In this document: piece after piece, positions 21,774 through 36,009 of the stretch
Numbering within the stretch: position 1 is the stretch's first letter
Layout of the letters: each line of letters starts with the position of its first letter
Sequence record: NC_023688.1
Length of the DNA: 64,000 bases
Reading direction: 5' to 3' (one strand)
The notes under the pieces: model-generated
Seen by the model: the letters and a program-made list of their open reading frames with translations, nothing else
Databases searched by the model: none
What the model was told of the DNA's origin: nothing
Made by a program: the position numbers and the translations under genes

Positions 21774-21893
21774 TGGCGGGGAAGACGGGACTCGAACCCG
21801 CGACCAATAGTTTAATTTGCGTTGGCTTGCTGTAAAGAATCTTCTCAGATTCCGCTTTTTGCGTCTACTGCTCTACCACTGAGCTACTTCCCC
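21774..21893 (-). ncRNA. tRNA-like RNA 1: acceptor, D and T arms, CCA end; anticodon arm replaced by hairpin + UUUACAGCAA module
   Basis: GGGGAAG/CTTCCCC-G-CCA; GCTC AGTGGTA GAGC; GCGGG TTCGAGT CCCGT; insert GAATCT-GAGA-AGATTC-TTTACAGCAA. Confidence 0.75.
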
Positions 21894-21901
21894 AAATTTT
21901 C

Positions 21902-22038
21902 ACAACACTATGCTGGCGGTGCCGGATTCGAACCGAGCGTTACAGGCTTAACAGGCGAGTATTTATTGCGGAAAACATTCTCGTCAGAATGAATTTTACA
22001 GTGTCCTACCACTAGACGAACCGCCAGCATAATGTTGT
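21902..22038 (-). ncRNA. tRNA-like RNA 2: 19-bp extended acceptor helix; anticodon arm replaced by hairpin + UUUUCCGCAA module
   Basis: ACAACATTATGCTGGCGGT/ACCGCCAGCATAGTGTTGT; Glu/Asp-type D arm GTCTAGTGGTAGGAC; TCGG TTCGAAT CCGG; insert CATTCT-GACG-AGAATG-TTTTCCGCAA. Confidence 0.72.
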
Positions 22039-22167
22039 TTGTTGTCGCGATGTTGGATTCGAACCAACGACGTTTCTCGATGTGCCCACACTATAACGGA
22101 TTCGAACCGTACTCGATACTTCTTTGCGATCAAAGGTGTTCTCCCACTGAACTAATCGCGACAACAA
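22039..22167 (-). ncRNA. tRNA-like RNA 3 with two T-loops
   Basis: 13-bp terminal helix TTGTTGTCGCGAT/ATCGCGACAACAA; D arm GTTC AGTGGGA GAAC; inner ACGG TTCGAAT CCGT and outer GTTGG TTCGAAT CCAAC. Confidence 0.7.
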
Positions 22168-22181
22168 AACTATCTTAACAC

Positions 22182-24292
22182 TTATTTCTTAGAAGGTAAA
22201 CCCTTTTCGTTGAAATTTTTCACTGCCAGCTTGAATTTCAAACGAACACACGGCTCACGATTCGGATTCATTTTCATGATCTTGGCGTTACCGCGATGAA
22301 TCAAAGCGTAAACATCTTCGATCTGATTACGTGCGACTAGCTCCGCGAATTCCTCACTGTATCGGATCTGAGTAGTGAAGTCAATGAACTCTTCACCAGA
22401 AATCAGATCTACACATTTAGTCACGGCACCATCGTACATGTAATCCGTGTTAACAACGACGCGAACATTACCAGAACCATCAAACGAGATCATGGGAATA
22501 CCAAGAGGACGTTTGTATGAAAGCATGATCAAACGATCTTTCTCTTTCTGTTCTTCGTACTCTTTGCGCTTCTGTTCGATCCCAGCCCACTTGCCTTCTT
22601 CTACGATTGCGGTATAAGTATTCGGGAACAACAGTTTTGCCAAAGCTTTCATACTCATAATAACTTCCTCTTAGTTGATGTCCCCATTATAGAGACATCG
22701 ATTTAGTTGTCAAGCGATAAAACAGGCAGCAATCAAAATTTTACAAAAAATATGTAGCGCCTGATCTTGGTGTAATCCGATTTTGCCATTACACTTAGCA
22801 TAATCGATGATCCAGTGACTTACAAGCTCTGCCAAACTCAGCCAGACGCTCTTGGTTGCAATGTAAACAACGAGCGCATGAGTAAGTTAGCCAGTAAAGC
22901 CAATGCACTCCATAGAGCGGTGAGTTGATAGGATTCTTTCCTCTTGCAATGCTATCAGTTTGCAAGACGTAATCGGCCGACCGATTATCAGCAGATAGAG
23001 CATTTCAAACATTTGACATCACCAAGAAAACATGATAACCGTTCTGTTTGATCTGTCTTATGTGGAAATTGTATCCACGTTTCAACAACTCAACATGATC
23101 ATGCTGACTAATGAAATCATGTCGATCTTGTGGATCTGTACTCACTTCATCATAGCCGATGTAATCAATGGTTCTGAGAATTCGAGTCAGATTTTCAGAC
23201 GCCATCATGTTCGATTTTCTCTTTCAGCTCTGTTTTACAGTTTGCCAAATGATGATCGATAACACGATCATCGGTAAACAGTTTCAGATTCAAACTGGTA
23301 CGATAGTGATCACCTTCGCCTTTGTGCGAGTGAAACCAGAACTCCACGTTGCCAGCATCATCAATGATAGCATCATTTGATTCCCAGTTGGAATCACCGT
23401 TCACTTTGATTTCATTCGCGTGTTCGACAATAGCTTGTTTGAAAGTCTTGATGTTATAGACCAACTCGTTTACGTTTCGCATTTTAATCCTTACATTGGA
23501 GTTGAAATTTGACCGAATTCGGCTTGCAGTCGCTTGTATTGTTCTAAGCGTTGTTGCTTCTGATTAGCTTCCCACGCTTCTTTCTTGACTCGATATTCTT
23601 CGTCTCGTTGTTTGATATGCTGGAATGAACGAGCAATCTCGGATTCGATATCTTCCAGAACATCATCAATTTCCCGATCATCAACATTTACGTCAATGCT
23701 ACAAACGTGGAAGTCGTCGTCCCAGCCAGTCTCATACGTGACGCTAATCGTCATATCTTCGAGATCCATGTTAACATTCAAATATTTGCCTGTCAACTTA
23801 CGAATGTTATCTTTATCATGGAACTGAGAAACTTTTGCGTTCCAATCAATCCGCAGTTCCTCGACTTTCGTCACGATACGTTTGCAATCTTCACTTTTGA
23901 ACATGTTATTCTCCGAATTTCTCTTTCAGTTTAAGATAGGTTTCGCGTTCTTGTTGCTCTCTTTGAGCAATTTGATTTAGTCTATCTTGCTCTTTTTTCT
24001 TGCGTTCGTCAAGCTTTGCTTTCAATCGATCCCCGAACTTAGAATTCAGATCGTTGATAATGGTATCGATGTCTTTCGTTCCGATGTCAGTTTCAACGCA
24101 GAACACGGCGCCATCTTCCCACCACATATGATCAAATGCCACGTGGACATCCAAATAAGAGAATCGGATATCAATTGTGGTAGTTCTCACTTTGAGATAA
24201 GTTTCAACGGTAGCAATATCTTGATTCCATTTGAATCGTGCGCTATCTGCCCACCGTTTTAATTTTTCGCAATCATTTTTGTTTATGAACAT
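22182..24292 (-). other. Small hypothetical ORFs
   Basis: Minus-strand ORFs of 67-158 aa with overlapping stop/start codons. Confidence 0.6.
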
Positions 24293-24368
24293 ATTGTTCT
24301 CCTTTTATGTATTCTCTCAGATCACGAAAATAATGTCAATAAAAAAGCCACCCGAAGGTGGCTTAATT

Positions 24369-25811
24369 TTAGAAATCAATACCGACGTATCGGTCGCTCA
24401 TGATCTTGTCAAGCATGATTTGCATCGGGTTAAACTCTTTTGCACTCAGGATTGTCTCCATGATTGCAGGACTAAAACCAGATACCAACGCAGTGCCTTG
24501 ATCGTCTTTGGTCACCGGATTGTTAGTCGGGCGCGGGCAAAGATTCCAGAACACAAGTTTCGGCATTTCGTAACCAGCATCGCGGTAAGTCTGACGAATC
24601 ACCTCAAAGTTGGTACGTTCGCGGTCACGCATACGATAGTATCCGCTATAACCGCCGTCTGCAACGTTGAATTCCATGTCAGACAATACAACCATCATAG
24701 ACGGCATATCAGACTGCGGAACTCGATGTTTCACGGCACGATCAAGAATGATCTTGAATGCACCAGCGAAGTTGGTAGAACCACCCCACGGAGCGCGTCC
24801 CAGATGATTCACCATGCTTTGCAGATCGTCGCCTTTCGCTTTGATGTTGTAGAACTGAGGATTATCATCGAAGGTAATCACTTCGTTCTTGAACACACCA
24901 CCAGAGCGTTCACCGATATACAGACCCAGAGAGATCGCGATATCCATAGCAGACAGACCAGCGACGGCAGTCGGGGTGCTCATAGAGCCAGAAACGTCAA
25001 CCATTGCGATTACGTTTTCAGTAGAGCCAGCCATCCAGTCGCGTTGTGCTTTCCATTGTGCATCAGCAGCAACAGAAGAACCGGTACGCAATGATTTGAT
25101 CATGTCATACGGGTACACAGCACCAGCGTTGATCTTAGCTTCGCCCTTTTTCAGAGACTCAAGATAAGCAACATAACGCTCATTCGCATTTTTCAGGAAT
25201 GCTTTCTGATATCGGGCAGATGCAACAGACGGCAGTTTACCGAAATCAATTCCATCCCACTGACGAGCACACATTTTTTGTTCAACGGTGTTCGACATAC
25301 GGACGATTGTCTGACGATACTCTTTAGCAGTCATACGCATAGCTTTGGCCAGAATACCAGCTTCTTTGCCTTTGCGAGGAGCCCACTTAGCAGCAAGACC
25401 GTTCTGTTTGATCAGAATCGCGTCCACCATGATAGCGACCGCAGCATCTTCGATTGGAGTACCAATCATTGAAACAACGTCCTTATAACGACCGATTTCC
25501 GGTGTGTTCATCAGAACGACGGTAGCGTCAACTTGATGGCGATGTGCCAGCAGTTTCAGCAGACGAATGAACTGTTCACGCTCACCAGCACCACCGCGAA
25601 TATCGCGAGCCCATTGCAGAATACGAACTGCCCAATCCGGAGATTCGGTGTAAGCTTCCACAAACATGGAACTCAGATCTTTACCGCGAGCGGAACCGAT
25701 TTGAGAAAACAGATTCAGACACTTATCACCAGTGGTATAGTTAGTAACTGCACCGTTCGCGGTACGTGCCAGTGCTTGCGCTTGAGTCATTGCATTCATA
25801 AAATTAGACAA
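24369..25811 (-). CDS. DUF2828-type protein (TROVE/Ro60-like helical domain + vWA)
   Basis: RTANGAVT...LNLF, WARDIRGGAGERE, AAKWAPR and LPSVA motifs; MIDAS VDVSGSM and VLSDMEF; TTG start with GAGG site. Confidence 0.85.
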   Translation of the reverse strand: MSNFMNAMTQAQALARTANGAVTNYTTGDKCLNLFSQIGSARGKDLSSMFVEAYTESPDWAVRILQWARDIRGGAGEREQFIRLLKLLAHRHQVDATVVLMNTPEIGRYKDVVSMIGTPIEDAAVAIMVDAILIKQNGLAAKWAPRKGKEAGILAKAMRMTAKEYRQTIVRMSNTVEQKMCARQWDGIDFGKLPSVASARYQKAFLKNANERYVAYLESLKKGEAKINAGAVYPYDMIKSLRTGSSVAADAQWKAQRDWMAGSTENVIAMVDVSGSMSTPTAVAGLSAMDIAISLGLYIGERSGGVFKNEVITFDDNPQFYNIKAKGDDLQSMVNHLGRAPWGGSTNFAGAFKIILDRAVKHRVPQSDMPSMMVVLSDMEFNVADGGYSGYYRMRDRERTNFEVIRQTYRDAGYEMPKLVFWNLCPRPTNNPVTKDDQGTALVSGFSPAIMETILSAKEFNPMQIMLDKIMSDRYVGIDF

Positions 25812-25846
25812 AGAAATTACCTCTTTCAGGTTTGTTTAAAATAGTC

Positions 25847-26425
25847 TCATTCGTGAGACAGTTTTTCTTTCCAACACTTGCGACAGAACGAAATATATCG
25901 TTGTTCAGCCCCAATGCAAATTTGTTCACCACGTTTAATAACTCGACCATCGTCGTCAATGCGAGCTACCATACATGACTTTCTTCCACAGTCACAGATC
26001 CCGGATAACTGTCTGATTTCATCAGCGATTGCTAAAAGAGTTCTTGAACCCTCAAACAAATTACCAAGAAAGTCAGTTCTTAGTCCGTAACACATAACAG
26101 GGACATCGAGCTTATCGACTACATCAGACAGTTGCCAGATCTGAGTTTCAGTTAGAAACTGTGCTTCGTCAATAAGTACACAATCAATTTTCTGTAGTTT
26201 ACTCTCTTTCTCAATCAAAGTAAACATATTTTCGTTGTGATGCACACAACGACATTCGCGATTGATCCCGATTCGAGAACCGATTGTTCCCTCAGTTCTG
26301 GTATCAAAAGCAGGTTTAAACAACAGTACGTTTTGACCGCGCTCGTTGTAGTTGTATGCAACTTGTAACAGTTGTGTACTCTTACCAACATTCATCGCGG
26401 CATGTGTAAAAAACAGCTTTGCCAT
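25847..26425 (-). CDS. tk: Thymidine kinase
   Basis: AAMNVGKST, LIDEAQF, YGLRTDF and zinc-binding CDCG...CRKC motifs. Confidence 0.95.
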   Translation of the reverse strand: MAKLFFTHAAMNVGKSTQLLQVAYNYNERGQNVLLFKPAFDTRTEGTIGSRIGINRECRCVHHNENMFTLIEKESKLQKIDCVLIDEAQFLTETQIWQLSDVVDKLDVPVMCYGLRTDFLGNLFEGSRTLLAIADEIRQLSGICDCGRKSCMVARIDDDGRVIKRGEQICIGAEQRYISFCRKCWKEKLSHE

Positions 26426-26811
26426 TAGTTCCTCGTTTTCTGTTACTATAGCTCGCCTTCCGTGGCAAGTAAACATCAGTAACAATATTTCGCTAAAAAG
26501 TTAGCTTGGTATTTGTCGTCCTTGATGTAGTATTTGATTCCATTCGAATAAACGGCTTTCAGCAACACAACGGTTTCTTGTTTGAACTCAGGCACAATCG
26601 TACAGCTACCGGTTTCTATAGTATACACTTGAATGCCGTTGTAATCAAACTCAACGCGAGCTTCTTGATAGAACTTGCCTCTCCACTCTTGTGGCTTATA
26701 TCGCGCTGCTTGTGCCGTCACTTCTCGAACCACGATTGGCTTTTCTGGTTCGCCGCACCCAGATAACAGCGCGACGAACACAAGAAACAGAACACGGATC
26801 ATAGAATTCCC

Positions 26812-27237
26812 TTACAGAACAGGCACCACGGTGATAGCGGAACTAGCGTTGTCGCCATCCATTTTCTTGGTGTAACTTACGTAAACCATGTTCATATGCT
26901 CTTTGTCATAAACACGGTCGATTACCATGTTTTTGAAGAACCAGCTTTTCTTCTGTGAGAAGATGTTTTTGCGAGAAGTCAGTTCAACGCCAGATTCGAA
27001 CGGTGCGGTCACACACTGCATGGCAACATCAGTCTGGTCTTCGATGCTCATAGAGCGAGACGGCAGGTTGACGTAACAAGTAATGTTCGGATAGTCCGGG
27101 TCGCTGAATACTTCTACACTCAGAGTATCTTTGAAGATCAGACCGGAGGTTTCTACTTCATACAGAGTATCAGCTTTAACGGCACCAACAGCCAGCATGG
27201 CACACACGAACATCACGTTTTGAATAATCTTTTTCAT
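26812..27237 (-). CDS. creA: CreA-family exported protein
   Basis: Signal peptide; F.DPDYPNITCY...Q.....C...KKSWFFK.M.I.R.YD...Y.SY...S.ITVVPV pattern. Confidence 0.75.
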   Translation of the reverse strand: MKKIIQNVMFVCAMLAVGAVKADTLYEVETSGLIFKDTLSVEVFSDPDYPNITCYVNLPSRSMSIEDQTDVAMQCVTAPFESGVELTSRKNIFSQKKSWFFKNMVIDRVYDKEHMNMVYVSYTKKMDGDNASSAITVVPVL

Positions 27238-29248
27238 TTCATTTCCTTAGCAATAAGTTTGCAGCCAGAAACCAGATAGGTTTCATTTTTGTATTTGAAT
27301 GAGATATAGTTTTGCGTAAAGGACAAATCATCCACAATTATGTCTTTTACAACTTCACCGACTTTATCGACTGCTGGCAGACGATAGAACATAGACTCGG
27401 TATTGAAATACTCTTTATACAGCGAAATTACATGCTTCATTATTGATTCCTCATTACAGAACACACAGCGTTGGTAACATAATACAATTTATTGTTGTAT
27501 CTGAATACTCATCCAATATCAATTCGATCCATAATATCGGATTGAAGATTGTTGATCAACGTGCCATCCGGTGTTTTCACATACACACCGGTTTGGAACC
27601 AGCAAGTAATAACACCTTCATATGATGCGAACACAGAGCTATTAAACAACATCAGAGCGACAAACGCAAGAACTTTTTTCATCATTCGCCCTGTACGTCC
27701 ATAAACAGATTATCAGCGCCGTAGAACTTGATAAAGCGTTGGCCAACGATTGTATACATTGTGCCATACTCGGACATGATGCTACCACAGTCGTGATACA
27801 TGTCTTTCACGAAAACGAATGGACGAACGCCAAAGACGTTTTCAAACAGTTGTTCGGCATCATCGTTGCGATTGTAGATCTTACCAAGACAATCAACGAT
27901 GCGAATCCCGATCAGATTCATTGTCAACAGTTCTTCCATATTCTTTACAAAAACTTTCATTTCGATTCCTCGTTTTCAGTTCGAATAATACTATCATAGC
28001 CATAATCGTGGCTGAATGCAATCACTTTTTGTTTGCGGTGAATGTGGTAGTAAAGTTCTAGACCACGATCCCGCTTATACAGTTCACATTCATTCGCGAA
28101 TGATACCGTGATTGTGTCAAACTGAGCTAGTTCCTCAAGAGTAAAATCCCAGAACTCTTTTGCCGAGTTAAACGTCATGTTGCGCATAATTAACCTCGTT
28201 TGTTGATATCTACGTTAAAGAAACCATTCAGAACGAAATAGTGGTCTTTCTTGACTACCAGTGTTGAATCTTCGTAACCAAAGATCATGCACTCACCGAA
28301 CATTGGTTTCCACTCCTGTTCAAGTTGACGACTGCGCTCGTATACACAATCGGACGTTTCGATCTCGGTAACGCTATCATCAATTTCAGCATACACAAGA
28401 TCGTCTAGTGTGTCAACACAAGTTTTATCAAAAAACACATCGATATCGGACGCTTTATCAACGGTAGTGTAACCACGTTCGGTAATGATATACAGTTCTG
28501 GAGATTTACCTTTGTTGATATACACGCCAGATTTATAGCCGAAACGATCTAAGATATACTGTGAGATCTTGCGGCTGTATGTGCATTTCAAAAGTGTATC
28601 ACGAAGATCATCAATAATTGCAACATGGTAACCTTCATTGAGTTCAAACGGAAACAGAAAATCGTGAATTGTAGCCATAATGTATTCCTCAAGTGATTCG
28701 TTGTTTCGATAGAGCTATCTTATCAGAACAGCGGGACAATGCAAGGAATTTTTCCAATAAAAAACCCGCCGAAGCGGGTTCTGTTTACCATTGTACGATC
28801 CAGCGGAAGGTACACGTTCTTTGTTTTCTGTCGTCAATGATGTCAGCACAATCGGAATTTTCCAAAGTGATAGCTTTAAGTTGATCTCTCACTTTAGCGC
28901 GACTCAGATTGGCATACTCTCGGCAGCTCTTGTTTGAGTAATTGCCGGTTTTGCAAACTTCGCAGTCGTATCCACGGACGATCTGATTTTTCTCACGATC
29001 ATATTCTTCATAAACGTTCATATTGATACGTTCTTGCTGAATGTGATAACGCCAGAAATCGTACTTACCAATTCGGTAATATGCGTTACAGTTCGCTTTC
29101 CAGAAGTTGTGGCCGATCAGATACTTGACTTCATTCTTGTTCTTAACTCGGGTAGTTCTTGCCATTTTGGATCTCCATTGTTAGTTAAAACAATGAAAAA
29201 ACTGTCCCTTGTGTGAAAACTTATGTCTAATCATATATTCCTTATAGA

Positions 29249-29331
29249 GGCGTCAGAAGGCGGGACTCGAACCCGCACCCCACTGGGTTTCTGCCCAGTA
29301 GCTCTTCCAATTGAGACTTACAACTAACACC
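29249..29331 (-). ncRNA. Degenerate tRNA-like element (pseudo-tRNA)
   Basis: Intact T arm GCGGG TTCGAGT CCCGC; 6-bp stem with 6-nt loop CAGAAA; mismatched inner acceptor; no CCA. Confidence 0.55.
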
Positions 29332-29928
29332 TATTATTTATTAGATCTCTTCGGCAGCGTCTGCCACCATTTCTGCTAACTTCTCTTCGTTGTCACTAAC
29401 AATCAAACAACGAGCTTCGTTGATCTCACGGCGATATGGATCCAAATCACCATAGCAGTATTCAGCACCACTTTTCATGATGTCGCGAATTTCATCCGCA
29501 CAATCTTCCAGATAATCTTCGTCCACGATATCTTTTCTGGCGAGAAATGCCACGATTTGCCAGCGTTGATGAACAACTTTCTTTTTGTAGCCTTCAATCA
29601 TCAGAATCATGTTCGTATTTCCAGTTTGCTTTGTGCAAAGCCTTGTGCATTTTAAAGTTGAAATCGTCTTTCTGTCTAGCCAGTTCTCGATTGAATGCGA
29701 ACTCACTAGCACAGGCAATCAACATCTTTTTGTCTTCTACCGCGTTAAACGGAGATTGTGCAACAAAGACAACTTTGTTTTGTTGATGCATTTCGTTGAT
29801 ATAACGACAAACCCGCTCGCCGTTGTCAAACAGTCGAGATAGATAGAGTCGTTGAAACTGAGATAATCGGACTTTCTTGTCCTTGTCAACGTCGATATAA
29901 TGCATAGCATCACCTCAAATGAATTTAG

Positions 29929-30692
29929 TGGCCCCGGTGGGAATCGAACCCACAACGAGCGGTTATTCTTTTAAGAACTCGATTATGGATTTTCCATTCT
30001 CCAATTCTTTAATTTGTGAACTTTTAAGGACGATAAGGTTTTTAACGGACTTCCACTTACAACGATCTCGTTCACGCTCATAACCTTTAACCTCTATGTA
30101 AAGATCCATAGACGGTAGATAAAAGTCCGGAAAATATAGATGTTCTCCGTTTTCCCAGCTATAAACGAAAGGAGTAATCTCGTTAGTGTATTCTATGTTA
30201 GCAGAACTTAGGCATTTTGCAACCAATAGTTCCCATTTCCCTTTAAATGTTTGTCCTTCAAACGCATACATCTTAACGCGACCAGATACGTTGTTTTGCT
30301 GTAAGAATCTGGGTTGTTTTTAACAACTTCCTTCATGACTTTCGAAAATTTAATTCTTTGTTCGTCCGTCCAAATGGTCTCATTCATACTCTTTGCGGCA
30401 TCGGATAACTTTTTCTAGTCTCTTCCGAAATGACAGGTTTATCCAAACCAAGTCTGGTCGCTTTTGTGTATTGGTTTGTGCCTTTACATCCGAGTTTCGA
30501 TGGAACGTGAAACTTTATTTTATTTTGGATTTTTGGAACAACGAACTTCGTGTTGTCTAAGTGAATTTTGTATTCTTACAGATTTTGTCGCAGTATGCGC
30601 AGTTCATTAGATTATCTCCTAGATTGTGTTATATCACTATTTATCTAAGAGATTGTGTGAGCCGCTTGCTTGAACCCTCTAGCTACGGGGCC
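29929..30692 (-). tRNA. tRNA-Ile2-like (CAU), split in the anticodon by a 692-nt insert
   Basis: 5' half 30692-30658 GGCCCCGTAGCTAGAGGGTTCAAGCAAGCGGCTCA joined to 3' half 29965-29929 TAACCGCTCGTTGTGGGTTCGATTCCCACCGGGGCCA gives a canonical cloverleaf. The GGCCCC acceptor resembles Ile2. Confidence 0.8.
29963..30606 (-). mobile_element. Homing endonuclease-like gene (Zn finger + NUMOD3-like + PD-(D/E)xK), frameshifted in its 5' half
   Basis: Intact C-terminal ORF 30271-29963 with PDFYLP...IEVKG. The upstream part reads MNCAYCDKICK..SLRQHEVRC...SEETRKKLSDAAK...YSKNNVSGRVK once four single-A indels are corrected. Confidence 0.75.
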
Positions 30693-30732
30693 TTGTTTAT
30701 AGGAACCATTATTACATAGTCCCTATTTGTTG

Positions 30733-31125
30733 TCAACCTTTAAGATTCAGTTTGTATCGAATAGAACTCATGAAACTCATGATGTCTTCCAACAGATTTA
30801 CCAGATCGAAATGACGTTTGGTTTCCAGATACTCATGCACCATAGTACACTCTTGTAGGAAATTGTCAATCAACATTTCAACTTCAACTTCCGCATGTGA
30901 CACAGAAAATGTCTGAGCATAACCGCGAGCAATAGAAGCCTCAGCAAACGCATCTACCAACTCAGGTAAGCTTGTGTAATATTCGTTTAGTGCCATATGT
31001 CTGCTATAGACGGTCGTCACCAGATGATTGTGGTGAACGTAGGCCACGCTTTTCAACAGCTTGCAGATTAGATCACCAACGCTTGAGTTCGTATCGCCTT
31101 TGAAATCTTTAAATGAACTACTCAT
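30733..31125 (-). CDS. Ferritin/Dps-like four-helix protein (tentative)
   Basis: HHNHL...RHMALNEYY...LVDAFAE...DLVNLLEDI pattern. Confidence 0.55.
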   Translation of the reverse strand: MSSSFKDFKGDTNSSVGDLICKLLKSVAYVHHNHLVTTVYSRHMALNEYYTSLPELVDAFAEASIARGYAQTFSVSHAEVEVEMLIDNFLQECTMVHEYLETKRHFDLVNLLEDIMSFMSSIRYKLNLKG

Positions 31126-31172
31126 TGTATTCTCCTAATGAAAAAGGGAGCCGAAGCTCCCTTTTATTTATC

Positions 31173-31257
31173 TGGTGCGGATGGTCGGACTCGAACCGAC
31201 ATGCCCGGAGGCGCTAGATCCTAAATCTAGTGTGACTGCCAATTTCACCACATCCGC
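31173..31257 (-). tRNA. tRNA-Leu(UAG)
   Basis: CTAGA TT TAG GA TCTAG, long V arm, CCA. Confidence 0.95.
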
Positions 31258-31263
31258 ATTATT

Positions 31264-31351
31264 TGGAGGAGAAAGTGGGATTCGAACCCACGGACTCTTG
31301 CGGGCCTACGAATTAGCAATCCGCTACGTTCGGCCTCTCTGTCATTTCTCC
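31264..31351 (-). tRNA. tRNA-Ser(GCU)
   Basis: GCGGA TT GCT AA TTCGT, long V arm, CCA. Confidence 0.9.
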
Positions 31352-31707
31352 ATGTTCTTTAATGTATTCGGCAGCTCGTTTAATCTGTTCCCATTGAGAA
31401 TCAGTAACACACTGACCGGATAACACGAACGAGGCTCTTACGTTTTCCTCGATCTCTTGTTTTAAGCTTTGCAATAGTGAGTTCCTCTTCGAACAAAACC
31501 GCCAAAGTCTTTTTGTCCAATGCAATGAACACCGCGACTAACTTTGATAAGTCCAAGTTTTAACAGCTTTTCAATCTGTTGATTGGTACACTTAGCATCA
31601 CCTTGAGTAGTAGCGAAACCGTATGAATCAGCTTTATCAGCGAAACGGGATGCCAGCTCAAGATCTTGTTTTGTTGCTTTCATGATATAACTCTCTATTG
31701 TTTGATT

Positions 31708-31799
31708 TGGCGGAAGCGATCCGATTCGAACGGATGGACGGGGTTAACCGCCGACACTTTTCAAGAGTGTTGCAATAAGCCGGACTCTGCCACGCTTCC
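31708..31799 (-). tRNA. tRNA-Ser(UGA)
   Basis: ACACT CT TGA AA AGTGT, long V arm, G73-CCA. Confidence 0.95.
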
Positions 31800-31940
31800 A
31801 AATTCTTCGACACGGCTTTATGTCGTCGTGATTCTTGATCATTACGATCTGGCTACACACGCGCATCACCTTCCCGTTTGATAATTTAACGAGCTACGGG
31901 AATCATAGCAGCTCATTTAGCCTTTAGCAAGCTAAAAATG

Positions 31941-32013
31941 CGGGGGTAACTGGGCTCGAACCAGTGCATGACGGAATCAAAGTCCGTTGCCTTACCAACT
32001 TGGCTATACCCCT
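31941..32013 (-). tRNA. tRNA-Gln(UUG)
   Basis: ACGGA CT TTG AT TCCGT; no encoded CCA. Confidence 0.92.
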
Positions 32014-32126
32014 ATAAACTGGGACGAATATGAACGTTTAACGTGGGTCATCGTCTTATCGTTTCGGTAACTTAATCCTACTTTGTGTAACCCCACATCA
32101 TTCAACGCAACGCTGAATCAATTTTG

Positions 32127-32200
32127 TCCGTCATATAGGATTTGAACCTATGACCCTCTGATCCCAAACCAGATGCGCTACCGGACTGCGCTAATGACGG
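32127..32200 (-). tRNA. tRNA-Pro(UGG)
   Basis: TCTGG TT TGG GA TCAGA; 3' end CAA. Confidence 0.92.
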
Positions 32201-32214
32201 AGTATTCTTTATAA

Positions 32215-32321
32215 TAGGACGCTAAGGTAGAGAATCGAACTCTACATGAAATCAATACCGACGGGGCAATCTATATCCCGACTTTCGAGAAGCTATCTCA
32301 TTGCACTTAAAAGCATTAGCG
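32215..32321 (-). ncRNA. tRNA-like RNA retaining only an acceptor-like stem and T arm
   Basis: CGCTAA/TTAGCG terminal stem, GTAGAG TTCGATT CTCTAC T arm, about 70 nt non-tRNA interior. Confidence 0.55.
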
Positions 32322-32346
32322 ATTTCACCTTTCAAAGCGATTAAAC

Positions 32347-32423
32347 TGGTGCATCGGACTGGACTTGAACCAGTGACCAGCGGATTTTCAATCCGCCACT
32401 CTACCATACTGAGTTACCGATGC
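32347..32423 (-). tRNA. tRNA-Phe(GAA)
   Basis: GCGGA TT GAA AA TCCGC, CCA. Confidence 0.95.
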
Positions 32424-32430
32424 AAAATTT

Positions 32431-32507
32431 TGGGGTGGCGGACGGGCTTCGAACCCGTGACTATCAGGATCACAACCTGAAGTTCTACCAAACTGAACTA
32501 CCGCCAC
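32431..32507 (-). tRNA. tRNA-His(GUG)
   Basis: TCAGG TT GTG AT CCTGA, C73-CCA. Confidence 0.95.
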
Positions 32508-32588
32508 ATAAATGATCACTCGAAAGAAATCATTTATGTAACGAGTTACATACCAGATGCTACAAACGGGGCATCTGGATCCCTCTTA

Positions 32589-32673
32589 TGGTGCTCGGCA
32601 CAAGATTCGAACTTGCGATGCCTTTCGGTCTGGATTACAAAACCAGTGCATTCAACCACTCTGCCAACCGAGC
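32589..32673 (-). tRNA. tRNA-Thr(UGU) with an atypical long variable arm
   Basis: CTGGT TT TGT AA TCCAG; V arm ACCGAAAGGCATC; CCA. Confidence 0.8.
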
Positions 32674-32682
32674 GTTTTAAAT

Positions 32683-32774
32683 TGGTGGATGCGGTAGGAT
32701 TCGAACCTACAACGTTTACCCTGTGGGGCCAGATTTACAGTCTGGTGCAATACCACCGTCATTGCAGCACATCC
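32683..32774 (-). tRNA. tRNA-Tyr(GUA)
   Basis: CCAGA CT GTA AA TCTGG, long V arm, CCA. Confidence 0.95.
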
Positions 32775-32799
32775 ATTATTCTTTATTTAGTACGCTAAG

Positions 32800-32873
32800 A
32801 AGCGAGTACCTGATTCGAACAGGTGATCTCTGGGATATGAGCCCAGCGAGGACGGCCTCTCCTCCAACTCGCA
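32800..32873 (-). tRNA. Initiator-type tRNA-fMet(CAU)
   Basis: CTGGG CT CAT AT CCCAG (three G-C pairs); unpaired 1:72; no CCA. Confidence 0.85.
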
Positions 32874-32893
32874 TCTTAGCGCACTAATCAATT

Positions 32894-32969
32894 TGGTTCT
32901 CCGTATGGAATTCGAATCCATGTTACCGCCGTGAAAGGGCAGTGTCCTAGTCCACTAGACGAACGGAGA
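32894..32969 (-). tRNA. tRNA-Glu(UUC)
   Basis: CTGCC CT TTC AC GGCGG, CCA. Confidence 0.93.
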
Positions 32970-33248
32970 TCTGTCAGTAAGCGAAACTAAACAATCGTCT
33001 TTGTTTTGCTTTTAAGTCTTCTTCGACAACAGAGACATTATCGCATGTTTCCGCAGTAGAGTAAACATCTTTTTGTTTTTCTTTTTCAGCGGCTTCCGCT
33101 GCTTTCTTTCTAGCAAGTGGGCCAACGTTTTTCCACAAAGGCGCGTTGTACCATGCTGCACTACATTGATTGCCAGAGCCACGATTGGCGCGAGCGTCTA
33201 AATCATTACTCATTATAAACTCCTTTAATAGCAAGTCTATTTAGTACC

Positions 33249-33381
33249 AAATTTAAATGCACTGTCTAGATCCCCGCAGGTGGTTCCCACCTACTAGCCT
33301 TTGTTCGCACAAGCTTGCGGCTCTTAGCTACATACGAGGGCTTATCTCGTCACATTTAGGTTAGGGCAATGCACTTAAATT
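33249..33381 (-). ncRNA. Candidate structured ncRNA (about 130 nt)
   Basis: Terminal helix AAATTTAAGTGCA/TGCATTTAAATTT enclosing several hairpins; no ORF. Confidence 0.5.
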
Positions 33382-33455
33382 TGGTGGAGACGACGGGATT
33401 TCCGCCCGTATCTCAGATCCCAGTGACCTGCGATTATGAAGTTATCTACGTCCCC
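33382..33455 (-). ncRNA. Non-canonical cloverleaf with Ala identity (G3.U70, A73, CCA)
   Basis: GGGGACG/CGTCTCC-A-CCA; CAGGT CACTGGG ATCTG; T-like arm ACGGG CGGAAAT CCCGT; lacks U33, G18G19 and TTC. Confidence 0.65.
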
Positions 33456-33502
33456 GAGAAGGCTTAAACGTAACGAGTCAGAGGTTTAAGCGCGATTGAA
33501 TT

Positions 33503-33577
33503 TGGTGGTGCATAGTAGATTTGAACTACTGACCGACGGCGTATGAAACCGCAGCTCTACCACTGAGCTAATGCACC
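33503..33577 (-). tRNA. tRNA-Met(CAU), elongator type
   Basis: GCGGT TT CAT AC GCCGT, CCA. Confidence 0.88.
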
Positions 33578-33769
33578 AGACGGTATCAAGAGTCGATACC
33601 GAGGCAATAATATTGATTGAACTTATACTACCGCTATATAGGCCGCAGTATAAGAAGCGCGTTGGTGTCAATAGTAACGTTTAAGTTATTCGCCACACAC
33701 AACAATCACCGCTTTTTATAGCCTATCGCCACGCAATAAGTATATAGCCTATTGCTTGACTCGACTATT

Positions 33770-33845
33770 TGGTCCGCCGTGGTGGGTATGATCCACCAAC
33801 CTATCGGTTAAAAGCCGATTGCTCTACCAGTTGAGCTAACGGCGG
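33770..33845 (-). tRNA. tRNA-Lys(UUU) with atypical T loop
   Basis: ATCGG CT TTT AA CCGAT; T loop ATCATAC; CCA. Confidence 0.9.
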
Positions 33846-33853
33846 TTTGTTCT

Positions 33854-33924
33854 CAGGGGCGGTAGGAGTCGAACCCACCTCAACGGATTTGGAATCCGCC
33901 GCATAACCGATTTGCTACGCCCCT
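33854..33924 (-). tRNA. tRNA-Trp(CCA)
   Basis: GCGGA TT CCA AA TCCGT; no encoded CCA end. Confidence 0.9.
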
Positions 33925-34740
33925 ATATTCTTACCAGCTATCAAAATCCGTAATAGGAACGCTCTTTGCTCCATCTTTGACAGCTTTAGCACTAACTACA
34001 GTACCGATTGAGCCGCTTTGATATTCAACATCAATCAAGTTCGTTTCGTGCATCTGCATGAGTTCCATCATACGCTGAATCTCAAGCTTTGTAAACCTTA
34101 CTTTATTCATTTTTCACCTACAGAATAGGAGCTTCGATTGTGACATCAAGAACGGAATAATACGTGCCGTAATCCGAACTTTTATCGTTGTAATGTGCGC
34201 GAACTTTACAATCGGCATCATCCACATCTTCCGCTTCTACCAACTTAATGGTATCGAATGACTTAGATGATCCCATGTATTCGCTTTTCATATAACGTAT
34301 CTTAGCAAGAAACAACATCGGTGTCAACCCTTAGCGTATAGATTTTCGAAGTATGTTCAGACATAGGCTGAACACCGCAAATTTCATCAGCAATCAGCTT
34401 TGGAGCGAGTCTAGGACTAACAGAAAGTCTATTGAAGATCACTTGATTTCCTTTATCCCAATACTGTTGTCTTTTAATCGCCGAAATCTGCTTAGACTTG
34501 ATTTCCGTCTCTTCTGCTTTCAGAAGTTCGAATTCCAAATCATCGCTATAGACAACACCATACGCGATTACGCTATCAAAGTCAATAGGACATTCAGGCG
34601 TTTCTGTATATCTAATGATCTGCCTCAGTGTTCGAACATCATCTTGAAACCAACCGCAGTTGATAAAGCAGTGTCCAACACAATCGCCGTTCTTCATGAA
34701 CAGCGCCCAACTAGGTGCGCTCATAACTTATTTCTCAATT

Positions 34741-34815
34741 TGGAGCACAGGATCTGGATCGAACAGACGATAAAGTGATTTGCAATCACTTGCCTTACCT
34801 CTTGGCTACCTGCGC
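34741..34815 (-). tRNA. tRNA-Cys(GCA)
   Basis: AGTGA TT GCA AA TCACT, U73-CCA. Confidence 0.95.
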
Positions 34816-34824
34816 ATGTTAAAT

Positions 34825-34898
34825 TGGAGCCTCATTCGGGAATCGAACCCGACACTACGACTTGGAAGGACGGTATGTGACCACTACACCAATGAGGC
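34825..34898 (-). tRNA. tRNA-Gly(UCC)
   Basis: CT TCC AA loop (anticodon stem with two mismatches), U73-CCA. Confidence 0.85.
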
Positions 34899-34967
34899 AC
34901 TTCGAGTAGTCGAGCCGACTTATCCGTATTCTTTCAACGGTGAGCTGATAGCTACTCTAAAAATTTG

Positions 34968-35041
34968 TGGAGGTTAAGGGGCTCGAACCCTTGACCTACT
35001 GGTTGCAAACCAGTCGCTCGTTCCAACTGAGCTAAACCCCC
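34968..35041 (-). tRNA. tRNA-Ala(UGC)
   Basis: ACTGG TT TGC AA CCAGT; G3.U70. Confidence 0.93.
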
Positions 35042-35079
35042 AAATTCTAATAGATACTCGCAAGTATACATTAGAATAG

Positions 35080-35202
35080 GCACTTTATGCAAGTACCTAC
35101 GCAAGTCTTCGGATTCACATACGGGAGTGGTGACTAACCCACGTTACTTTTACCTGCTGTTCCCTCTCAGCCGCACATCCAACTACCGAAGTAAAGGAGT
35201 GC
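35080..35202 (-). ncRNA. Candidate structured ncRNA with CUGAGA and ACAGCAG loops
   Basis: GCAC..TTTA/TAAAGTGC, CTTCGG/CCGAAG, GGGA/TCCC and GTGG/CCAC stems; no ORF. Confidence 0.5.
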
Positions 35203-35316
35203 TATCTTTTAATAGTAGATTTGAAGTTTTGTATTGGTTGCAGAAGTGAATCCATGCATTTTCAAAGAACATTGAACTACTGTCGGGTAAGTTCATTTTT
35301 CCTACTAGGTAGAAAC

Positions 35317-35393
35317 TGGCAGTGACGACGGGGCTCGAACCCGCGCTCTCCGACGTGACAGGCCGGAATTTTAACCAACTAAACTACGTCACT
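35317..35393 (-). tRNA. tRNA-Asp(GUC)
   Basis: CCGGC CT GTC AC GTCGG, G73-CCA. Confidence 0.95.
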
Positions 35394-35399
35394 AGAAAC

Positions 35400-35474
35400 T
35401 GGTAGCCATGGGCAGGATTGAACTGCCGACCCCACCCTTATCAGGGGTGTGCTCTACCACTGAGCTACATGGCT
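35400..35474 (-). tRNA. tRNA-Ile(GAU)
   Basis: CACCC CT GAT AA GGGTG, CCA. Confidence 0.95.
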
Positions 35475-35481
35475 ATAAACT

Positions 35482-35588
35482 GGAAGACTTTTAACTGCCA
35501 CCTGGACTCTTGTGCTAGAGAGTTGAGGAATCGAACCTCACTGTTTTCTTGTTAATAGAAAAATTCGAATGGTTTGCTGAAATCTTCC
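35482..35588 (-). ncRNA. YrlA-like (Y RNA-like) permuted tRNA mimic with CAGCAA motif
   Basis: GGAAGATTT/AAAGTCTTCC terminal stem, then CAGCAA, T arm TGAGG TTCGATT CCTCA, closed acceptor-like ACTCT..AGAGT, and D-like loop CCAGGTGGCAG. Confidence 0.68.
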
Positions 35589-35611
35589 GTAGCACGGTAA
35601 ATTGTTATTTG

Positions 35612-35692
35612 CGGAGACGGCTGGACTCGAACCAGCATAGAGTTAACCTCACGGATTAACAGTCCGTCGCTCAACCTTTGAGCCACGTCTCC
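35612..35692 (-). tRNA. tRNA-Asn(GUU) with an atypical long variable arm
   Basis: ACGGA CT GTT AA TCCGT; V arm GAG-GTTAA-CTC; no CCA. Confidence 0.88.
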
Positions 35693-35718
35693 CAAATAAC
35701 AACTTGCAAATAAGAAAC

Positions 35719-35781
35719 AGAGTGAACTTTATAGGCTATTTCAAAATAATGGCTTTTTAAGTTGGTTGCTGAAATCACTCT
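35719..35781 (-). ncRNA. Short stem-CAGCAA RNA (element B)
   Basis: AGAGTGA-TTTCAGCAA...TCACTCT; own TTTACA-17-TATAGT promoter. Confidence 0.62.
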
Positions 35782-35793
35782 TTATCTTTGTTT

Positions 35794-36009
35794 ACTATAC
35801 ACTACTATTTAGTGATTGTAAAACAAAGACTTCTTAAATCTTTACTCTAACAGGCTCACTTTTGTTTTTCATCCGCAGAAAAGTTTTGATTGCTGAATGG
35901 AGCCTTATAAAGATTGTATCACGGTTTATCAACGCTGTAAACTATCTTTTATTTATGCTCTACTTTAAGAGCATGTGATAATGATAGCACAGTGTTTTAA
36001 TAGAGTAAA
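35794..36009 (-). promoter_or_regulatory. Three tandem sigma70-type promoters
   Basis: -35/-10 at 35822-17/35799-94 (TTTACA/TATAGT), 35941-36/35918-13 (TTTACA/TACAAT) and 36009-04/35986-81 (TTTACT/TATCAT); all have 17-bp spacers. Confidence 0.75.
35852..35905 (-). ncRNA. Short stem-CAGCAA RNA (element C)
   Basis: AGGCTC-CATTCAGCAA...GAGCCT; own TTTACA-17-TACAAT promoter. Confidence 0.62.

What the first reader, a model, noticed from the sequence alone, without database searches (positions are those of the whole stretch)
21774..35905. Candidate phage Ro/Y-like ribonucleoprotein system: DUF2828 protein plus a family of stem-C(A/C)GCAA small RNAs
Seen in sequence: at least five minus-strand ncRNA elements share a helix ending in a U tract followed by unpaired C(A/C)GCAA. 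They are 21774-21893 (UUUACAGCAA), 21902-22038 (UUUUCCGCAA), 35482-35588, 35719-35781 and 35852-35905 (UUCAGCAA). A weaker variant lies at 35216-35254 (UUCUGCAA). The flanking stems differ in sequence but keep their pairing. A DUF2828-type gene with a vWA MIDAS motif lies between the two RNA clusters. Established: bacterial Ro60 (Rsr; TROVE+vWA) binds Y RNAs such as the tRNA-mimicking YrlA and is linked to RNA repair. Inference: DUF2828 is a Ro-like ring and these RNAs are its Y-type partners, with a recognition motif unlike the canonical Ro-binding stem.
Basis: partly seen in the sequence, partly recalled or inferred. Interest (0 to 1): 0.88.

Follow-up and report, generated by a model that had tools for sequence, protein, structure and literature searches.

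The report
Phage Ro-like protein with partner RNAs
This T4-like Aeromonas phage encodes a predicted doughnut-shaped RNA-binding protein resembling the Ro60 autoantigen, plus six small RNAs (some tRNA look-alikes) that share one short structural tag; the same tag sits beside the same protein in many unrelated phages, so they probably form a previously undescribed RNA-protein particle.

Summary
The window is Aeromonas phage PX29.

A covariance model trained only on distant phages ranks four window elements (E4, E5, E3, E6) as its top four hits. The module is circularly permuted in E1 and E2, where it forms a hairpin in the anticodon position of tRNA-like RNAs.

The gene at 24369-25799 (DUF2828 + DUF7788/vWA, intact MIDAS) gives a confident AlphaFold model. 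Its only full-length PDB matches are Ro60 structures.

Across 79 other DUF2828 loci, the model finds 149 hits, all on the DUF2828 strand, and 72 of 79 loci have a significant one. In 100 control viral loci, the only significant hit lies in the one locus that also encodes DUF2828. T4's syntenic region has neither.

The module also flanks DUF2828 in Felix O1-like, Listeria, Staphylococcus, Campylobacter, Enterococcus, Bacillus and mycobacteriophage genomes. It often encloses a permuted tRNA (YrlA-like) or abuts the gene's own ribosome-binding site.

Binding itself is inferred, not shown. I rate this a new variant of the Ro60/Y RNA kind.

The parts
24369..25799 (-). DUF2828 + DUF7788 (vWA, MIDAS) protein of 476 aa, predicted to be a Ro60-like ring. 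An alternative TTG start at 25811 has better Shine-Dalgarno spacing and gives 480 aa.
   Evidence: Pfam DUF7788 1.4e-50, DUF2828 6e-29, VWA_2 1.5e-5, and no TROVE hit. PHROG 850 'RNA-binding protein' 1.5e-163. AF2 pLDDT 85.5. Foldseek top nine PDB hits are all Ro60. MIDAS residues are invariant in 35 homologues.
35851..35911 (-). E5: short module RNA. Helix AGGCUC/GAGCCU, linker CAUU, core CAGCAA at 35895-35890, 32-nt insert, 3' G at 35851. It starts a few bases after a sigma-70-like promoter.
   Evidence: R1 39.2 bits, E 7e-7. phiAS5 has the compensatory pair AGGCUG/CAGCCU. Promoter 35941-35913.
35718..35787 (-). E4: short module RNA. Helix AGAGUGA/UCACUCU, linker UUU, core CAGCAA at 35771-35766, 40-nt insert, 3' G at 35718. 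It lies directly after a second promoter and ahead of tRNA-Asn.
   Evidence: R1 40.3 bits, E 3.7e-7. Aeh1, Ah1 and phiAS5 have GGAAUGA/UCAUUCC, which is two compensatory changes. Promoter 35822-35794.
35480..35595 (-). E3: module RNA between tRNA-Asn and tRNA-Ile. The 9-bp terminal helix GGAAGAUUU/AAGUCUUCC is flush with core CAGCAA at 35579-35574. The 83-nt insert holds a T-arm (GAGGUUCGAUUCCUC).
   Evidence: R1 26.0 bits, E 9e-4. Compensatory changes occur in Aeh1 (G-C to A-U) and phiAS5 (G-C to C-G). The fold gives the terminal helix with z -2.3.
35110..35259 (-). E6: module RNA between tRNA-Asp and tRNA-Ala. Helix (U)GGAUUCAC/GUGAAUCC(G), linker UU, core CUGCAA at 35243-35238 (CAGCAA in phiAS5), and a strongly conserved 119-nt insert.
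   Evidence: R1 23.6 bits, E 3.5e-3. Alignment of four phages. Full strict signature.
21902..22038 (-). E2: tRNA-like RNA with acceptor, D arm, T arm and a terminal helix extended to 19 bp. A permuted module hairpin replaces the anticodon arm at 21992-21966: UCAUUCU-GACG-AGAAUGU-UUU-CCGCAA.
   Evidence: Fold -51.2 kcal/mol, z -5.0. 94% column identity across four phages; the core is CCGCAA or CUGCAA. KVP40 has a relative with GAUACU-GACA-AGUAUC...CAGCAC and the shared GCCUGUUAAGC.
21774..21893 (-). E1: tRNA-like RNA with normal ends and an encoded CCA. A 54-nt block replaces the anticodon loop and holds the permuted module at 21853-21827: GGAAUCU-GAGA-AGAUUCU-UUA-CAGCAA. RefSeq annotates it as tRNA-Leu with an intron.
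   Evidence: Rfam tRNA 54.3 bits with a 54-nt insertion in the anticodon loop. Hairpin covariation: PX29 GAAUCU/AGAUUC, phiAS5 GAUUCU/AGAAUC, L004 CAAACU/AGUUUG. No U33-type 7-nt anticodon loop can be reconstituted (sequence).
35913..35941 (-). Sigma-70-like promoter TTTACA-17-TACAAT driving E5.
   Evidence: 10 of 12 matches, TG extension. It is conserved in relatives.
35794..35822 (-). Sigma-70-like promoter TTTACA-17-TATAGT driving E4 and the downstream tRNA cluster.
   Evidence: It is nearly invariant in four phages.

Best explanation
The DUF2828/vWA protein is a divergent, phage-borne relative (by predicted fold) of the Ro60 ring. It forms ribonucleoprotein particles with a set of phage-encoded Y-RNA-like small RNAs.

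Each RNA displays the same docking module: a 7-bp helix with an invariant G-C second pair, a 3-nt linker, unpaired CNGCAA on the 5' strand, and a G after the 3' arm. By analogy with Ro60, which reads the 5' strand of a bulged helix, I infer that the protein recognises this module on its outer surface.

The variable insert is the cargo. It can be nothing much (E4, E5), a conserved structured domain (E6), or a tRNA mimic. In most phages the tRNA mimic is circularly permuted, as in YrlA. In PX29, Aeh1 and KVP40 the topology is inverted: a normal-ended tRNA body carries the module as a hairpin in place of its anticodon loop (E1, E2).

In PX29 the RNAs are made from early-type promoters as part of tRNA-cluster transcripts. 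They are presumably released by the tRNA-processing enzymes. The tRNA-like cargo would then tether or decoy tRNA-binding host factors such as exoribonucleases, processing enzymes or tRNA-directed defence nucleases.

In many other phages (not clearly in PX29) a minimal copy of the module ends 0-6 nt before the Shine-Dalgarno sequence of the DUF2828 gene. Excess protein would then shut off its own translation.

**Shown here:** the motif, its covariation, the predicted fold, and co-occurrence with strand linkage.
**Inferred:** binding, processing, the tether or decoy role, and autoregulation.
For: - **Fold.** AF2 model pLDDT 85.5. Foldseek against PDB gives nine full-length Ro60 matches with E 2.7e-8 to 3.5e-6, then only vWA domains. 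The MIDAS motif is invariant.
- **Module in the window.** R1, trained without the window, ranks E4, E5, E3 and E6 first to fourth.
- **Covariation across phages.** 71 distinct modules show six of seven pairs with double-sided changes and an invariant G:C at pair 2. Cells changed on both sides number 191, against 48 +/- 7 in shuffles.
- **Covariation among close relatives** in E1, E3, E4 and E5.
- **Unselected test.** Of distinct CAGCAA hexamers next to DUF2828 on its strand, 57% have a perfect fixed-register helix, against 10% on the other strand. The full signature is 46/95 against 0/389.
- **Co-occurrence.** 149 of 149 R1 hits in 79 loci lie on the DUF2828 strand, and 72 of 79 loci have a hit with E < 0.01. 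In 100 control viral loci, the only hit with E < 0.01 lies in L122, the one locus with a DUF2828 homologue.
- **Phage groups unseen in training.** Staphylococcus 6ec, Campylobacter CP30A, Enterococcus EF5 and Bacillus Izhevsk have modules abutting the gene. Listeria A511, mycobacteriophage Snenia and Felix O1-like warpig also have them.
- **Negative control.** T4's syntenic region has no DUF2828 and no module.
- **tRNA-like cargo.** Rfam YrlA aligns to the insert of Snenia's second module (39 bits, E 2.6e-7 locally). 18 of 77 signature modules contain a T-loop.
- **Autoregulation.** Module 3' arms abut the Shine-Dalgarno sequence in at least 8 distinct loci.
- **Literature.** Bas63 gp130, described as Ro60-like and lying upstream of tRNAs, counters the ppl defence (PMC11482910). 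The canonical phage Ro60 binds adjacent Yrl RNAs and host PNPase (PMC12135203).
Against: - There is no binding, expression or processing data for any of these RNAs.
- Sequence methods do not link DUF2828 to TROVE. Pfam gives no TROVE hit. An HMM profile against PDB matches only the vWA part, at E 0.1.
- The TM-score of about 0.6 comes from a predicted model.
- In PX29 the RNAs are not adjacent to the gene. E1 and E2 lie 2.3-2.6 kb downstream, and E3-E6 lie 9.3-10.1 kb upstream.
- Two DUF2828 phages (Sinorhizobium phiM19, Serratia BF) show no R1 hit within 6 kb, and 7 of 79 loci have none.
- The case for the permuted modules of E1 and E2 rests on few lineages. A loose hairpin search is at chance level.
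- The covariation alignment was selected for pairing, so its 100% paired figure is by construction.
Confidence: 0.75

Rival explanations
1. The module is a host- or phage-RNase processing or stability signal, or a leader element, for tRNA-cluster and early transcripts. It lies near DUF2828 only because that gene sits in the same early/tRNA region. DUF2828 does not bind it.
For: In PX29 the canonical modules lie in tRNA-cluster spacers and directly after promoters. The 3' arm is often followed by GUUU, resembling RNase E or terminator contexts.
Against: The module follows DUF2828, not tRNA clusters:
- T4's tRNA cluster and its syntenic region lack it.
- Staphylococcus 6ec, Campylobacter CP30A and mycobacteriophage Snenia have it directly flanking DUF2828, with few or no tRNAs nearby.
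- It is conserved across hosts with different RNase repertoires.
- The one control locus with significant hits is the one that has DUF2828.
Confidence: 0.07
2. The modules are only cis-acting operators. The protein binds them to control translation or stability of its own and neighbouring messages. There is no trans-acting Y-RNA-like particle.
For: Minimal copies with 7-14-nt inserts sit in the DUF2828 5' UTR, with the 3' arm touching the Shine-Dalgarno sequence, in many loci.
Against: - Most copies enclose structured cargo, such as permuted tRNAs or conserved 70-280-nt domains.
- They carry their own promoters and terminators.
- They can lie 10 kb from the gene (PX29, KVP40).
- PX29 itself has no convincing 5' UTR copy.
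Confidence: 0.1
3. E1 and E2 are ordinary tRNA genes interrupted by introns or insertion remnants, or decaying pseudo-tRNAs. Their resemblance to the other elements is coincidental.
For: RefSeq annotates E1 as tRNA-Leu joined from two pieces, and Aeh1's copy as tRNA-Val. A neighbouring tRNA-like gene at 39162-39261 does have an intron-like insert.
Against: - No canonical 7-nt anticodon loop with U33 can be formed after removing any single block.
- The insert holds the module at exactly the 10-nt helix-to-core spacing, with the CU-G and A-AG signature.
- The hairpin covaries in phiAS5 and L004.
- E1- and E2-like RNAs are conserved in Vibrio phage KVP40.
Confidence: 0.05
4. A different protein binds the module, and DUF2828 is a syntenic passenger.
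For: Binding was not tested. Several small uncharacterised ORFs surround the gene in PX29.
Against: Neighbouring genes differ completely between lineages: tk in PX29, small terminase in 6ec, tRNAs in Felix O1-like phages, an exonuclease in CP30A. DUF2828 is the only constant partner, and it has a predicted RNA-binding Ro fold.
Confidence: 0.05

Closest known systems
Ro60 (Rsr, TROVE + vWA) with Y RNAs, especially bacterial and phage YrlA/Yrl RNAs (Rfam RF02553; Chen et al. 2014, PMC4201824; Thermus phage phiLo Ro60, PMC12135203)
   Same: - Predicted helical-repeat ring plus a vWA domain with MIDAS.
- Small RNA genes on the same strand next to the gene, often several per locus.
- A docking site made of a terminal helix with conserved unpaired bases on the 5' strand.
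- A tRNA-mimicking cargo domain (T arm, closed acceptor stem, D arm) with permuted topology in many lineages.
   Different: - No TROVE match by sequence. The protein is shorter (about 476 aa against 500-540).
- The docking motif is a 7-bp helix, a 3-nt linker and CNGCAA, not GNCGAAN0-1G / CGAA.
- No element reaches the YrlA gathering score.
- More RNAs per genome (six in PX29), with more diverse cargo.
- In PX29, Aeh1 and KVP40 the topology is inverted: a normal tRNA body carries the module in the anticodon position.
- Frequent copies occur in the protein's own 5' UTR.
Escherichia phage Bas63 gp130 (PhageMaP preprint, PMC11482910)
   Same: A phage protein noted as structurally Ro60-like and located directly upstream of a tRNA cluster. 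The authors speculated that some 'tRNAs' are Y RNAs. Felix O1-like phages carry a DUF2828 homologue in that position.
   Different: - I did not verify that gp130 itself is the DUF2828 homologue.
- No RNA motif was defined there.
- The RNAs found here in the Felix O1-like phage warpig are unannotated spacers between tRNA genes, not annotated tRNAs.
T4 stable RNAs species 1 and 2 (rnaC, rnaD)
   Same: Small RNAs of about 120-140 nt encoded with the tRNA cluster of a T4-type phage. They are similar in size and position to E1 and E2.
   Different: T4 has no DUF2828 gene and no module hit in the 45-kb syntenic region. The rnaC and rnaD sequences contain no CNGCAA module.
Translational autorepressors that bind an operator overlapping the Shine-Dalgarno sequence (T4 RegA and gp32, ribosomal proteins)
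   Same: A protein-binding RNA element sits immediately 5' of, or overlapping, the ribosome-binding site of the protein's own mRNA, and it mimics the protein's other RNA ligands.
   Different: Purely inferred here, and not evident in PX29 itself.

Membership tests
Ro60 / TROVE protein family | TROVE domain detectable by sequence (Pfam PF05731) | tested here: not met
   Pfam finds only DUF2828, DUF7788 and VWA_2. phmmer and profile searches against PDB match only the vWA part of the phiLo TROVE protein, at E 0.1-0.8.
Ro60 / TROVE protein family | Helical-repeat ring closed by a C-terminal vWA domain (fold) | tested here: met
   AF2 pLDDT 85.5, pTM 0.85. The Foldseek top nine PDB hits are all full-length Ro60 (E 2.7e-8 to 3.5e-6, TM 0.44-0.63). 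The next hits are vWA domains only. This rests on a prediction, not a solved structure.
Ro60 / TROVE protein family | MIDAS motif DxSxS...T...D in the vWA domain | tested here: met
   D268, S270, S272, T342 and D374 are invariant in 35 homologues.
Ro60 / TROVE protein family | Binds Y RNA on the outer surface and single-stranded RNA ends in the central cavity | not testable with these tools
   Needs EMSA, CLIP or a structure.
Ro60 / TROVE protein family | Partner RNA genes on the same strand close to the gene (criterion of Chen et al. 2014: within 4 kb) | tested here: met
   149 of 149 R1 hits lie on the gene's strand, and 72 of 79 loci are positive within the DNA held for each locus (up to 10 kb per side). 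The core motif peaks 0-100 and 400-500 nt after the stop codon. In PX29, E1 and E2 lie 2.3-2.6 kb downstream, but E3-E6 lie 9-10 kb upstream.
YrlA (Rfam RF02553) | Score at or above the gathering threshold (69 bits) | tested here: not met
   There is no YrlA hit on E0-E2, even at E <= 10. The only window hits are 32.7 and 22.5 bits, and both span adjacent true tRNAs. Snenia's module RNA scores 39.3 bits.
YrlA (Rfam RF02553) | GNCGAAN0-1G motif near the 5' end | tested here: not met
   It is replaced by CNGCAA at a fixed 10-nt distance from the outer helix pair.
YrlA (Rfam RF02553) | tRNA-like domain (T arm, D arm, acceptor stem) | tested here: met
   E1 scores 54 bits on the Rfam tRNA model. 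E2 has acceptor, D and T arms. E3 has only a T arm. Permuted tRNA domains occur in Snenia, warpig and many metagenomic loci.
YrlA (Rfam RF02553) | 5' and 3' ends form the protein-binding stem (permuted tRNA topology) | tested here: inconclusive
   This holds for E3-E6 and for most relatives. E1 and E2 have the opposite topology, with ends at the acceptor stem and the module as an internal hairpin. The true RNA ends are unmapped.
Genuine tRNA (for E1, annotated tRNA-Leu with intron) | A 7-nt anticodon loop with U33 and a purine at 37, before or after removal of one intron | tested here: not met
   The 54-nt block between the anticodon-stem strands offers no such loop. Different annotators call Leu (PX29) and Val (Aeh1).

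The most novel reading that the evidence does not exclude
DUF2828 proteins and their module RNAs form a widespread phage counter-defence or RNA-surveillance particle. Its adaptors are tRNA mimics, including a class not described before: tRNA bodies with normal ends and an encoded CCA whose anticodon loop is replaced by the protein-docking hairpin. The particle would capture or decoy tRNA-directed host nucleases, or recruit host exoribonucleases, while a copy of the docking module in the protein's own leader sets its dosage. Because DUF2828 also occurs in plants and fungi, the same RNA code might point to unknown eukaryotic partners.
Probability: 0.3. Interest if true: 0.92.

Novelty: new variant of a known kind. 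Interest (0 to 1): 0.8.

Why it matters
Ro60/Y RNA particles are known in animals, in about 5% of bacteria and in a handful of phages, and their function is still debated. This result would add a second, sequence-unrecognisable Ro-like family that is present in at least 710 sequenced phage genomes. These include well-studied and biocontrol phages such as Felix O1-like, Listeria A511, KVP40 and Campylobacter phages.

It also gives that family a precise and easily mutated RNA recognition code and a catalogue of candidate partner RNAs. The following become directly testable in laboratory phage-host pairs:
- what a phage Ro-like particle does;
- why phage tRNA clusters contain unexplained spacers and 'intron-containing' or pseudo-tRNAs;
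- whether the reported anti-defence phenotype of a Ro60-like phage protein depends on these RNAs.

It also corrects annotations: E1 is not a tRNA-Leu with an intron.

Tried and rejected
- **Simple word statistics.** TTYMSGCAA is at chance level and TTCAGCAA is only mildly enriched.
- **Free helix search around CNGCAA.** A 6-bp helix within 300 nt occurs by chance in about 55% of cases. I replaced this with a fixed-register test.
- **Whole-collection pattern scans.** My first pattern had the wrong spacing (6 N instead of 5 N), so I kept it as a negative control: 1 of 118 hits had pairing plus the G. The correct spacing gave 11 of 113. The loci held are too short to test for DUF2828 on the same contig.
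- **Rfam.** No known family other than tRNA was found in the window or in seven related loci.
- **An alternative 3' arm for E1.** AAAAUCUG after the CCA does not covary, so I rejected it.
- **A 5' UTR module for PX29's own gene.** There is only a weak UCGCAA/CCGCAA candidate inside the end of tk, with no R1 hit.
- **A generic search for permuted hairpins.** It is at chance level. Only the copies carrying the CU-G...A-AG signature are credible.
- **E0 (22042-22161) as a module carrier.** Its UCGCAA lies in an anticodon-like hairpin with no module helix, so I did not include it.

Full report
**Source and layout**

The window is identical to Aeromonas phage PX29, a T4-like member of the Straboviridae (genus Angelvirus). 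Window position equals record position minus 62000. Every feature discussed lies on the minus strand.

ARAGORN and Rfam find a large tRNA cluster at 31173-35692, plus outliers. The gene at 24369-25799 sits directly after thymidine kinase. It is annotated 'RNA-binding protein' in RefSeq.

**What the six elements share**

Reading the six elements showed that they share more than a U tract and C(A/C)GCAA. The picture became clear only after looking at distant homologues of the protein.

I collected 6397+ homologues and fetched 80 viral loci encoding them. The 400 nt upstream, or the first few hundred nt downstream, of the gene hold one to four copies of a helix-xxA-CAGCAA element in very different phages.

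Tabulating these copies gave a fixed geometry:
- a 7-bp helix at positions -10 to -4 relative to the core;
- an outer pair that is usually A-U;
- a second pair that is an invariant G-C;
- five freely covarying pairs;
- a 3-nt linker, most often UUA;
- the core C-N-G-C-A-A;
- an insert of 7 to about 300 nt;
- the 3' arm;
- then G.

**Is it more than chance?**

- *Position.* The core hexamer is 4-5 times enriched on the gene's strand just upstream and just downstream of the gene.
- *Pairing among unselected hexamers.* Among distinct CAGCAA hexamers close to the gene on its strand, 54 of 95 have a perfect fixed-register 7-bp partner within 320 nt, and 46 of 95 carry the full signature. On the opposite strand the figures are 38 of 389 and 0 of 389.
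- *Covariation.* In an ungapped alignment of 71 distinct modules, six of seven pairs show changes on both sides. There are 191 doubly changed cells, against 48 +/- 7 in shuffles. Sliding the partner by one to three columns collapses pairing to 32-42%. These sequences were selected for pairing, so the covariation and the slid control are the informative numbers, not the 100% paired figure.

**An independent test of the window**

I built covariance model R1 from 55 real module sequences of distant phages. None came from the window or from Aeh1, Ah1 or phiAS5.

Over the whole window, both strands, without filters, its top four hits are E4, E5, E3 and E6 (E 3.7e-7 to 3.5e-3). The fifth is the core region of E1. 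Nothing else scores below E 0.2.

The close relatives add compensatory changes:

| Element | PX29 | Relatives |
|---|---|---|
| E4 | AGAGUGA/UCACUCU | GGAAUGA/UCAUUCC |
| E5 | AGGCUC/GAGCCU | AGGCUG/CAGCCU |
| E3 | reference helix | G-C to A-U, and G-C to C-G |
| E1 hairpin | GAAUCU/AGAUUC | GAUUCU/AGAAUC; CAAACU/AGUUUG in metagenomic locus L004 |

**E1 and E2**

E1 scores 54 bits on the Rfam tRNA model, with a 54-nt block in place of the anticodon loop. E2 folds with acceptor, D and T arms and a 19-bp terminal helix.

In both, the module is circularly permuted. The 3' arm comes first, followed by G, one to three bases and A as a loop, then the 5' arm, the linker and the core. The same 10-nt spacing is kept.

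Vibrio phage KVP40 and locus L004 have related tRNA-like RNAs with the same arrangement. No canonical anticodon loop can be recovered, so the 'tRNA-Leu with intron' annotation is not tenable.

A loose search for such hairpins is at chance level. This part therefore rests on the signature and on few lineages.

**The protein**

Pfam assigns DUF2828 and DUF7788 (vWA) and gives no TROVE hit. Sequence searches of the PDB reach only the vWA domain of the Thermus phage phiLo TROVE protein, at non-significant E-values.

An AlphaFold2 model built on 35 homologues is confident (pLDDT 85.5, pTM 0.85). Foldseek against the PDB returns nine Ro60 entries over the full length: Xenopus 1yvr, 1yvp and 2i91; the 9nf8, 9nfa and 9nep cryo-EM entries; and phage phiLo 9l5y. 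Their E-values run from 2.7e-8 to 3.5e-6, with TM up to 0.63. Below them is a sharp drop to vWA-only hits. The MIDAS residues are invariant.

The Ro-like nature of the protein is already implied by database names: 'RNA-binding protein' in RefSeq and PHROG 850, and 'Ro-like RNA binding protein' in mycobacteriophage records.

**Co-occurrence**

- R1 finds 149 hits with E <= 1 in 79 DUF2828 loci (1.29 Mb). Every one lies on the gene's strand. Of these, 112 have E < 0.01, and they fall in 72 loci.
- In 100 control viral loci (0.83 Mb), the only hit with E < 0.01 and the next best hit both lie in L122. L122 is the single control locus with a DUF2828 homologue.
- Phage groups absent from training also show modules abutting the gene. 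Staphylococcus phage 6ec has three in tandem after the stop codon. Campylobacter CP30A has two just upstream. Enterococcus EF5 and Bacillus Izhevsk also have them.
- Listeria A511, mycobacteriophage Snenia and the Felix O1-like phage warpig have them too.
- Sinorhizobium phiM19 and Serratia BF gave no hit.
- T4's 45-kb syntenic region (tk, the tRNA cluster, rnaC, rnaD) has no DUF2828 and no hit below E 0.16.

**Cargo and regulation**

Many inserts are circularly permuted tRNAs (T arm, closed acceptor stem, D arm). The Rfam YrlA model aligns to Snenia's copy at 39 bits, below its threshold, and only over the tRNA-like part.

Other inserts are conserved non-tRNA domains.

Minimal modules with 7-14-nt inserts end 0-6 nt before the Shine-Dalgarno sequence of the DUF2828 gene in at least eight distinct loci. 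This suggests translational feedback. PX29 lacks a convincing copy of this kind.

In PX29, E5 and E4 each follow a sigma-70-like promoter. E3 and E6 fill spacers between tRNA genes. tRNA processing would therefore release them with the module helix at their ends.

**Relation to the literature**

- Chen et al. 2014 searched only genomes annotated with TROVE proteins and defined GNCGAAN0-1G as the likely Rsr-binding motif (PMC4201824).
- The phiLo study used the CGAA bulge to find Yrl1 and Yrl2, and showed binding to the phage Ro60 and to host PNPase (PMC12135203).
- A preprint notes that Bas63 gp130 is structurally Ro60-like, lies upstream of tRNAs and counters the ppl defence. It guesses that some tRNAs may be Y RNAs (PMC11482910).
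- LeBron gp53, named Ro-like, is moderately toxic when overexpressed (PMC13148394).
- Full-text searches for DUF2828, and for Ro60 with phage terms, found no description of this RNA module. Rfam 15 has no matching family.

**Verdict**

The system works like Ro60/Y RNA. It fails the sequence-defined membership tests for both TROVE and YrlA, so I file it as a new variant of a known kind. Binding, RNA ends and function remain to be shown.

Noticed in passing
window 39162-39261 (-): A tRNA-like gene carries a structured 26-28-nt insert in the anticodon loop, at or next to the canonical intron position. The phiAS5 orthologue lacks the insert and reads as a normal tRNA-Arg(UCU). The insert's stem covaries between PX29 and Aeh1/Ah1. 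Annotators call it tRNA-Lys with an intron (PX29) or tRNA-Glu (Aeh1). It is too short for a group I intron and carries no CNGCAA module.
   Followed up: partly
window 22042-22161 (-): E0 is an odd tRNA-like element conserved in four phages. It has one acceptor-type closing helix, a D arm, an anticodon-like hairpin and two consecutive T arms (GGUUCGAAUCC twice). ARAGORN calls part of it tRNA-Ala(cgc). Rfam tRNA gives only 22 bits.
   Followed up: partly
L012, L017, L019-L023, L026 and relatives, about 80-400 nt after the DUF2828 stop: A conserved RNA of about 280 nt, closed by a module helix (GGAUCG/CGAUCC plus UACAGCAA) and ending in a terminator, follows a short module RNA directly after the gene in an AT-rich metagenomic phage clade. 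It has no Rfam match at gathering score.
   Followed up: partly
L018, L049, L060, L074, L077: about 250-300 nt upstream of the DUF2828 start (about 580 nt in L060): A module RNA with a 72-77-nt insert contains the strongly conserved stretch AACCUUUCYGGAGGGGAAAGCAAAAACUCGCC. This is a second, non-tRNA cargo class. A third class (AGAGUGG...CCACUCU, insert of about 190-230 nt) lies further upstream in the same phages.
   Followed up: no
window 39287-39784 (-): The gene annotated '57B RNA ligase' matches Pfam Acb1 (the anti-CBASS 2H phosphodiesterase) at 9e-36. The RNA-ligase label looks outdated.
   Followed up: no
L083 (Listeria A511), L324 (Serratia BF), L084 (Snenia): DUF2828 neighbourhoods often contain RNA-repair or translation-related genes. 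A511 has an RtcB-type 'tRNA splicing ligase', an HD phosphohydrolase and a ribosome-associated inhibitor. Serratia BF has an RNA ligase, a CCA-adding enzyme/phosphodiesterase and a hibernation factor.
   Followed up: no
window 21767-21774 (-), and the same place in Aeh1 and L004: The sequence AAAAUCUG directly follows the encoded CCA of the E1-type RNA in PX29, Aeh1 and the distant locus L004. It resembles a module 3' arm plus G, but it does not covary with the 5' arm. Its role is unexplained.
   Followed up: partly
L322 (Sinorhizobium phiM19), L324 (Serratia BF): These two phages encode DUF2828 homologues (36-40% identity) but show no R1 hit within 6 kb on either side. Their partner RNAs may be elsewhere in the genome, may use a variant motif, or may be absent.
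   Followed up: no
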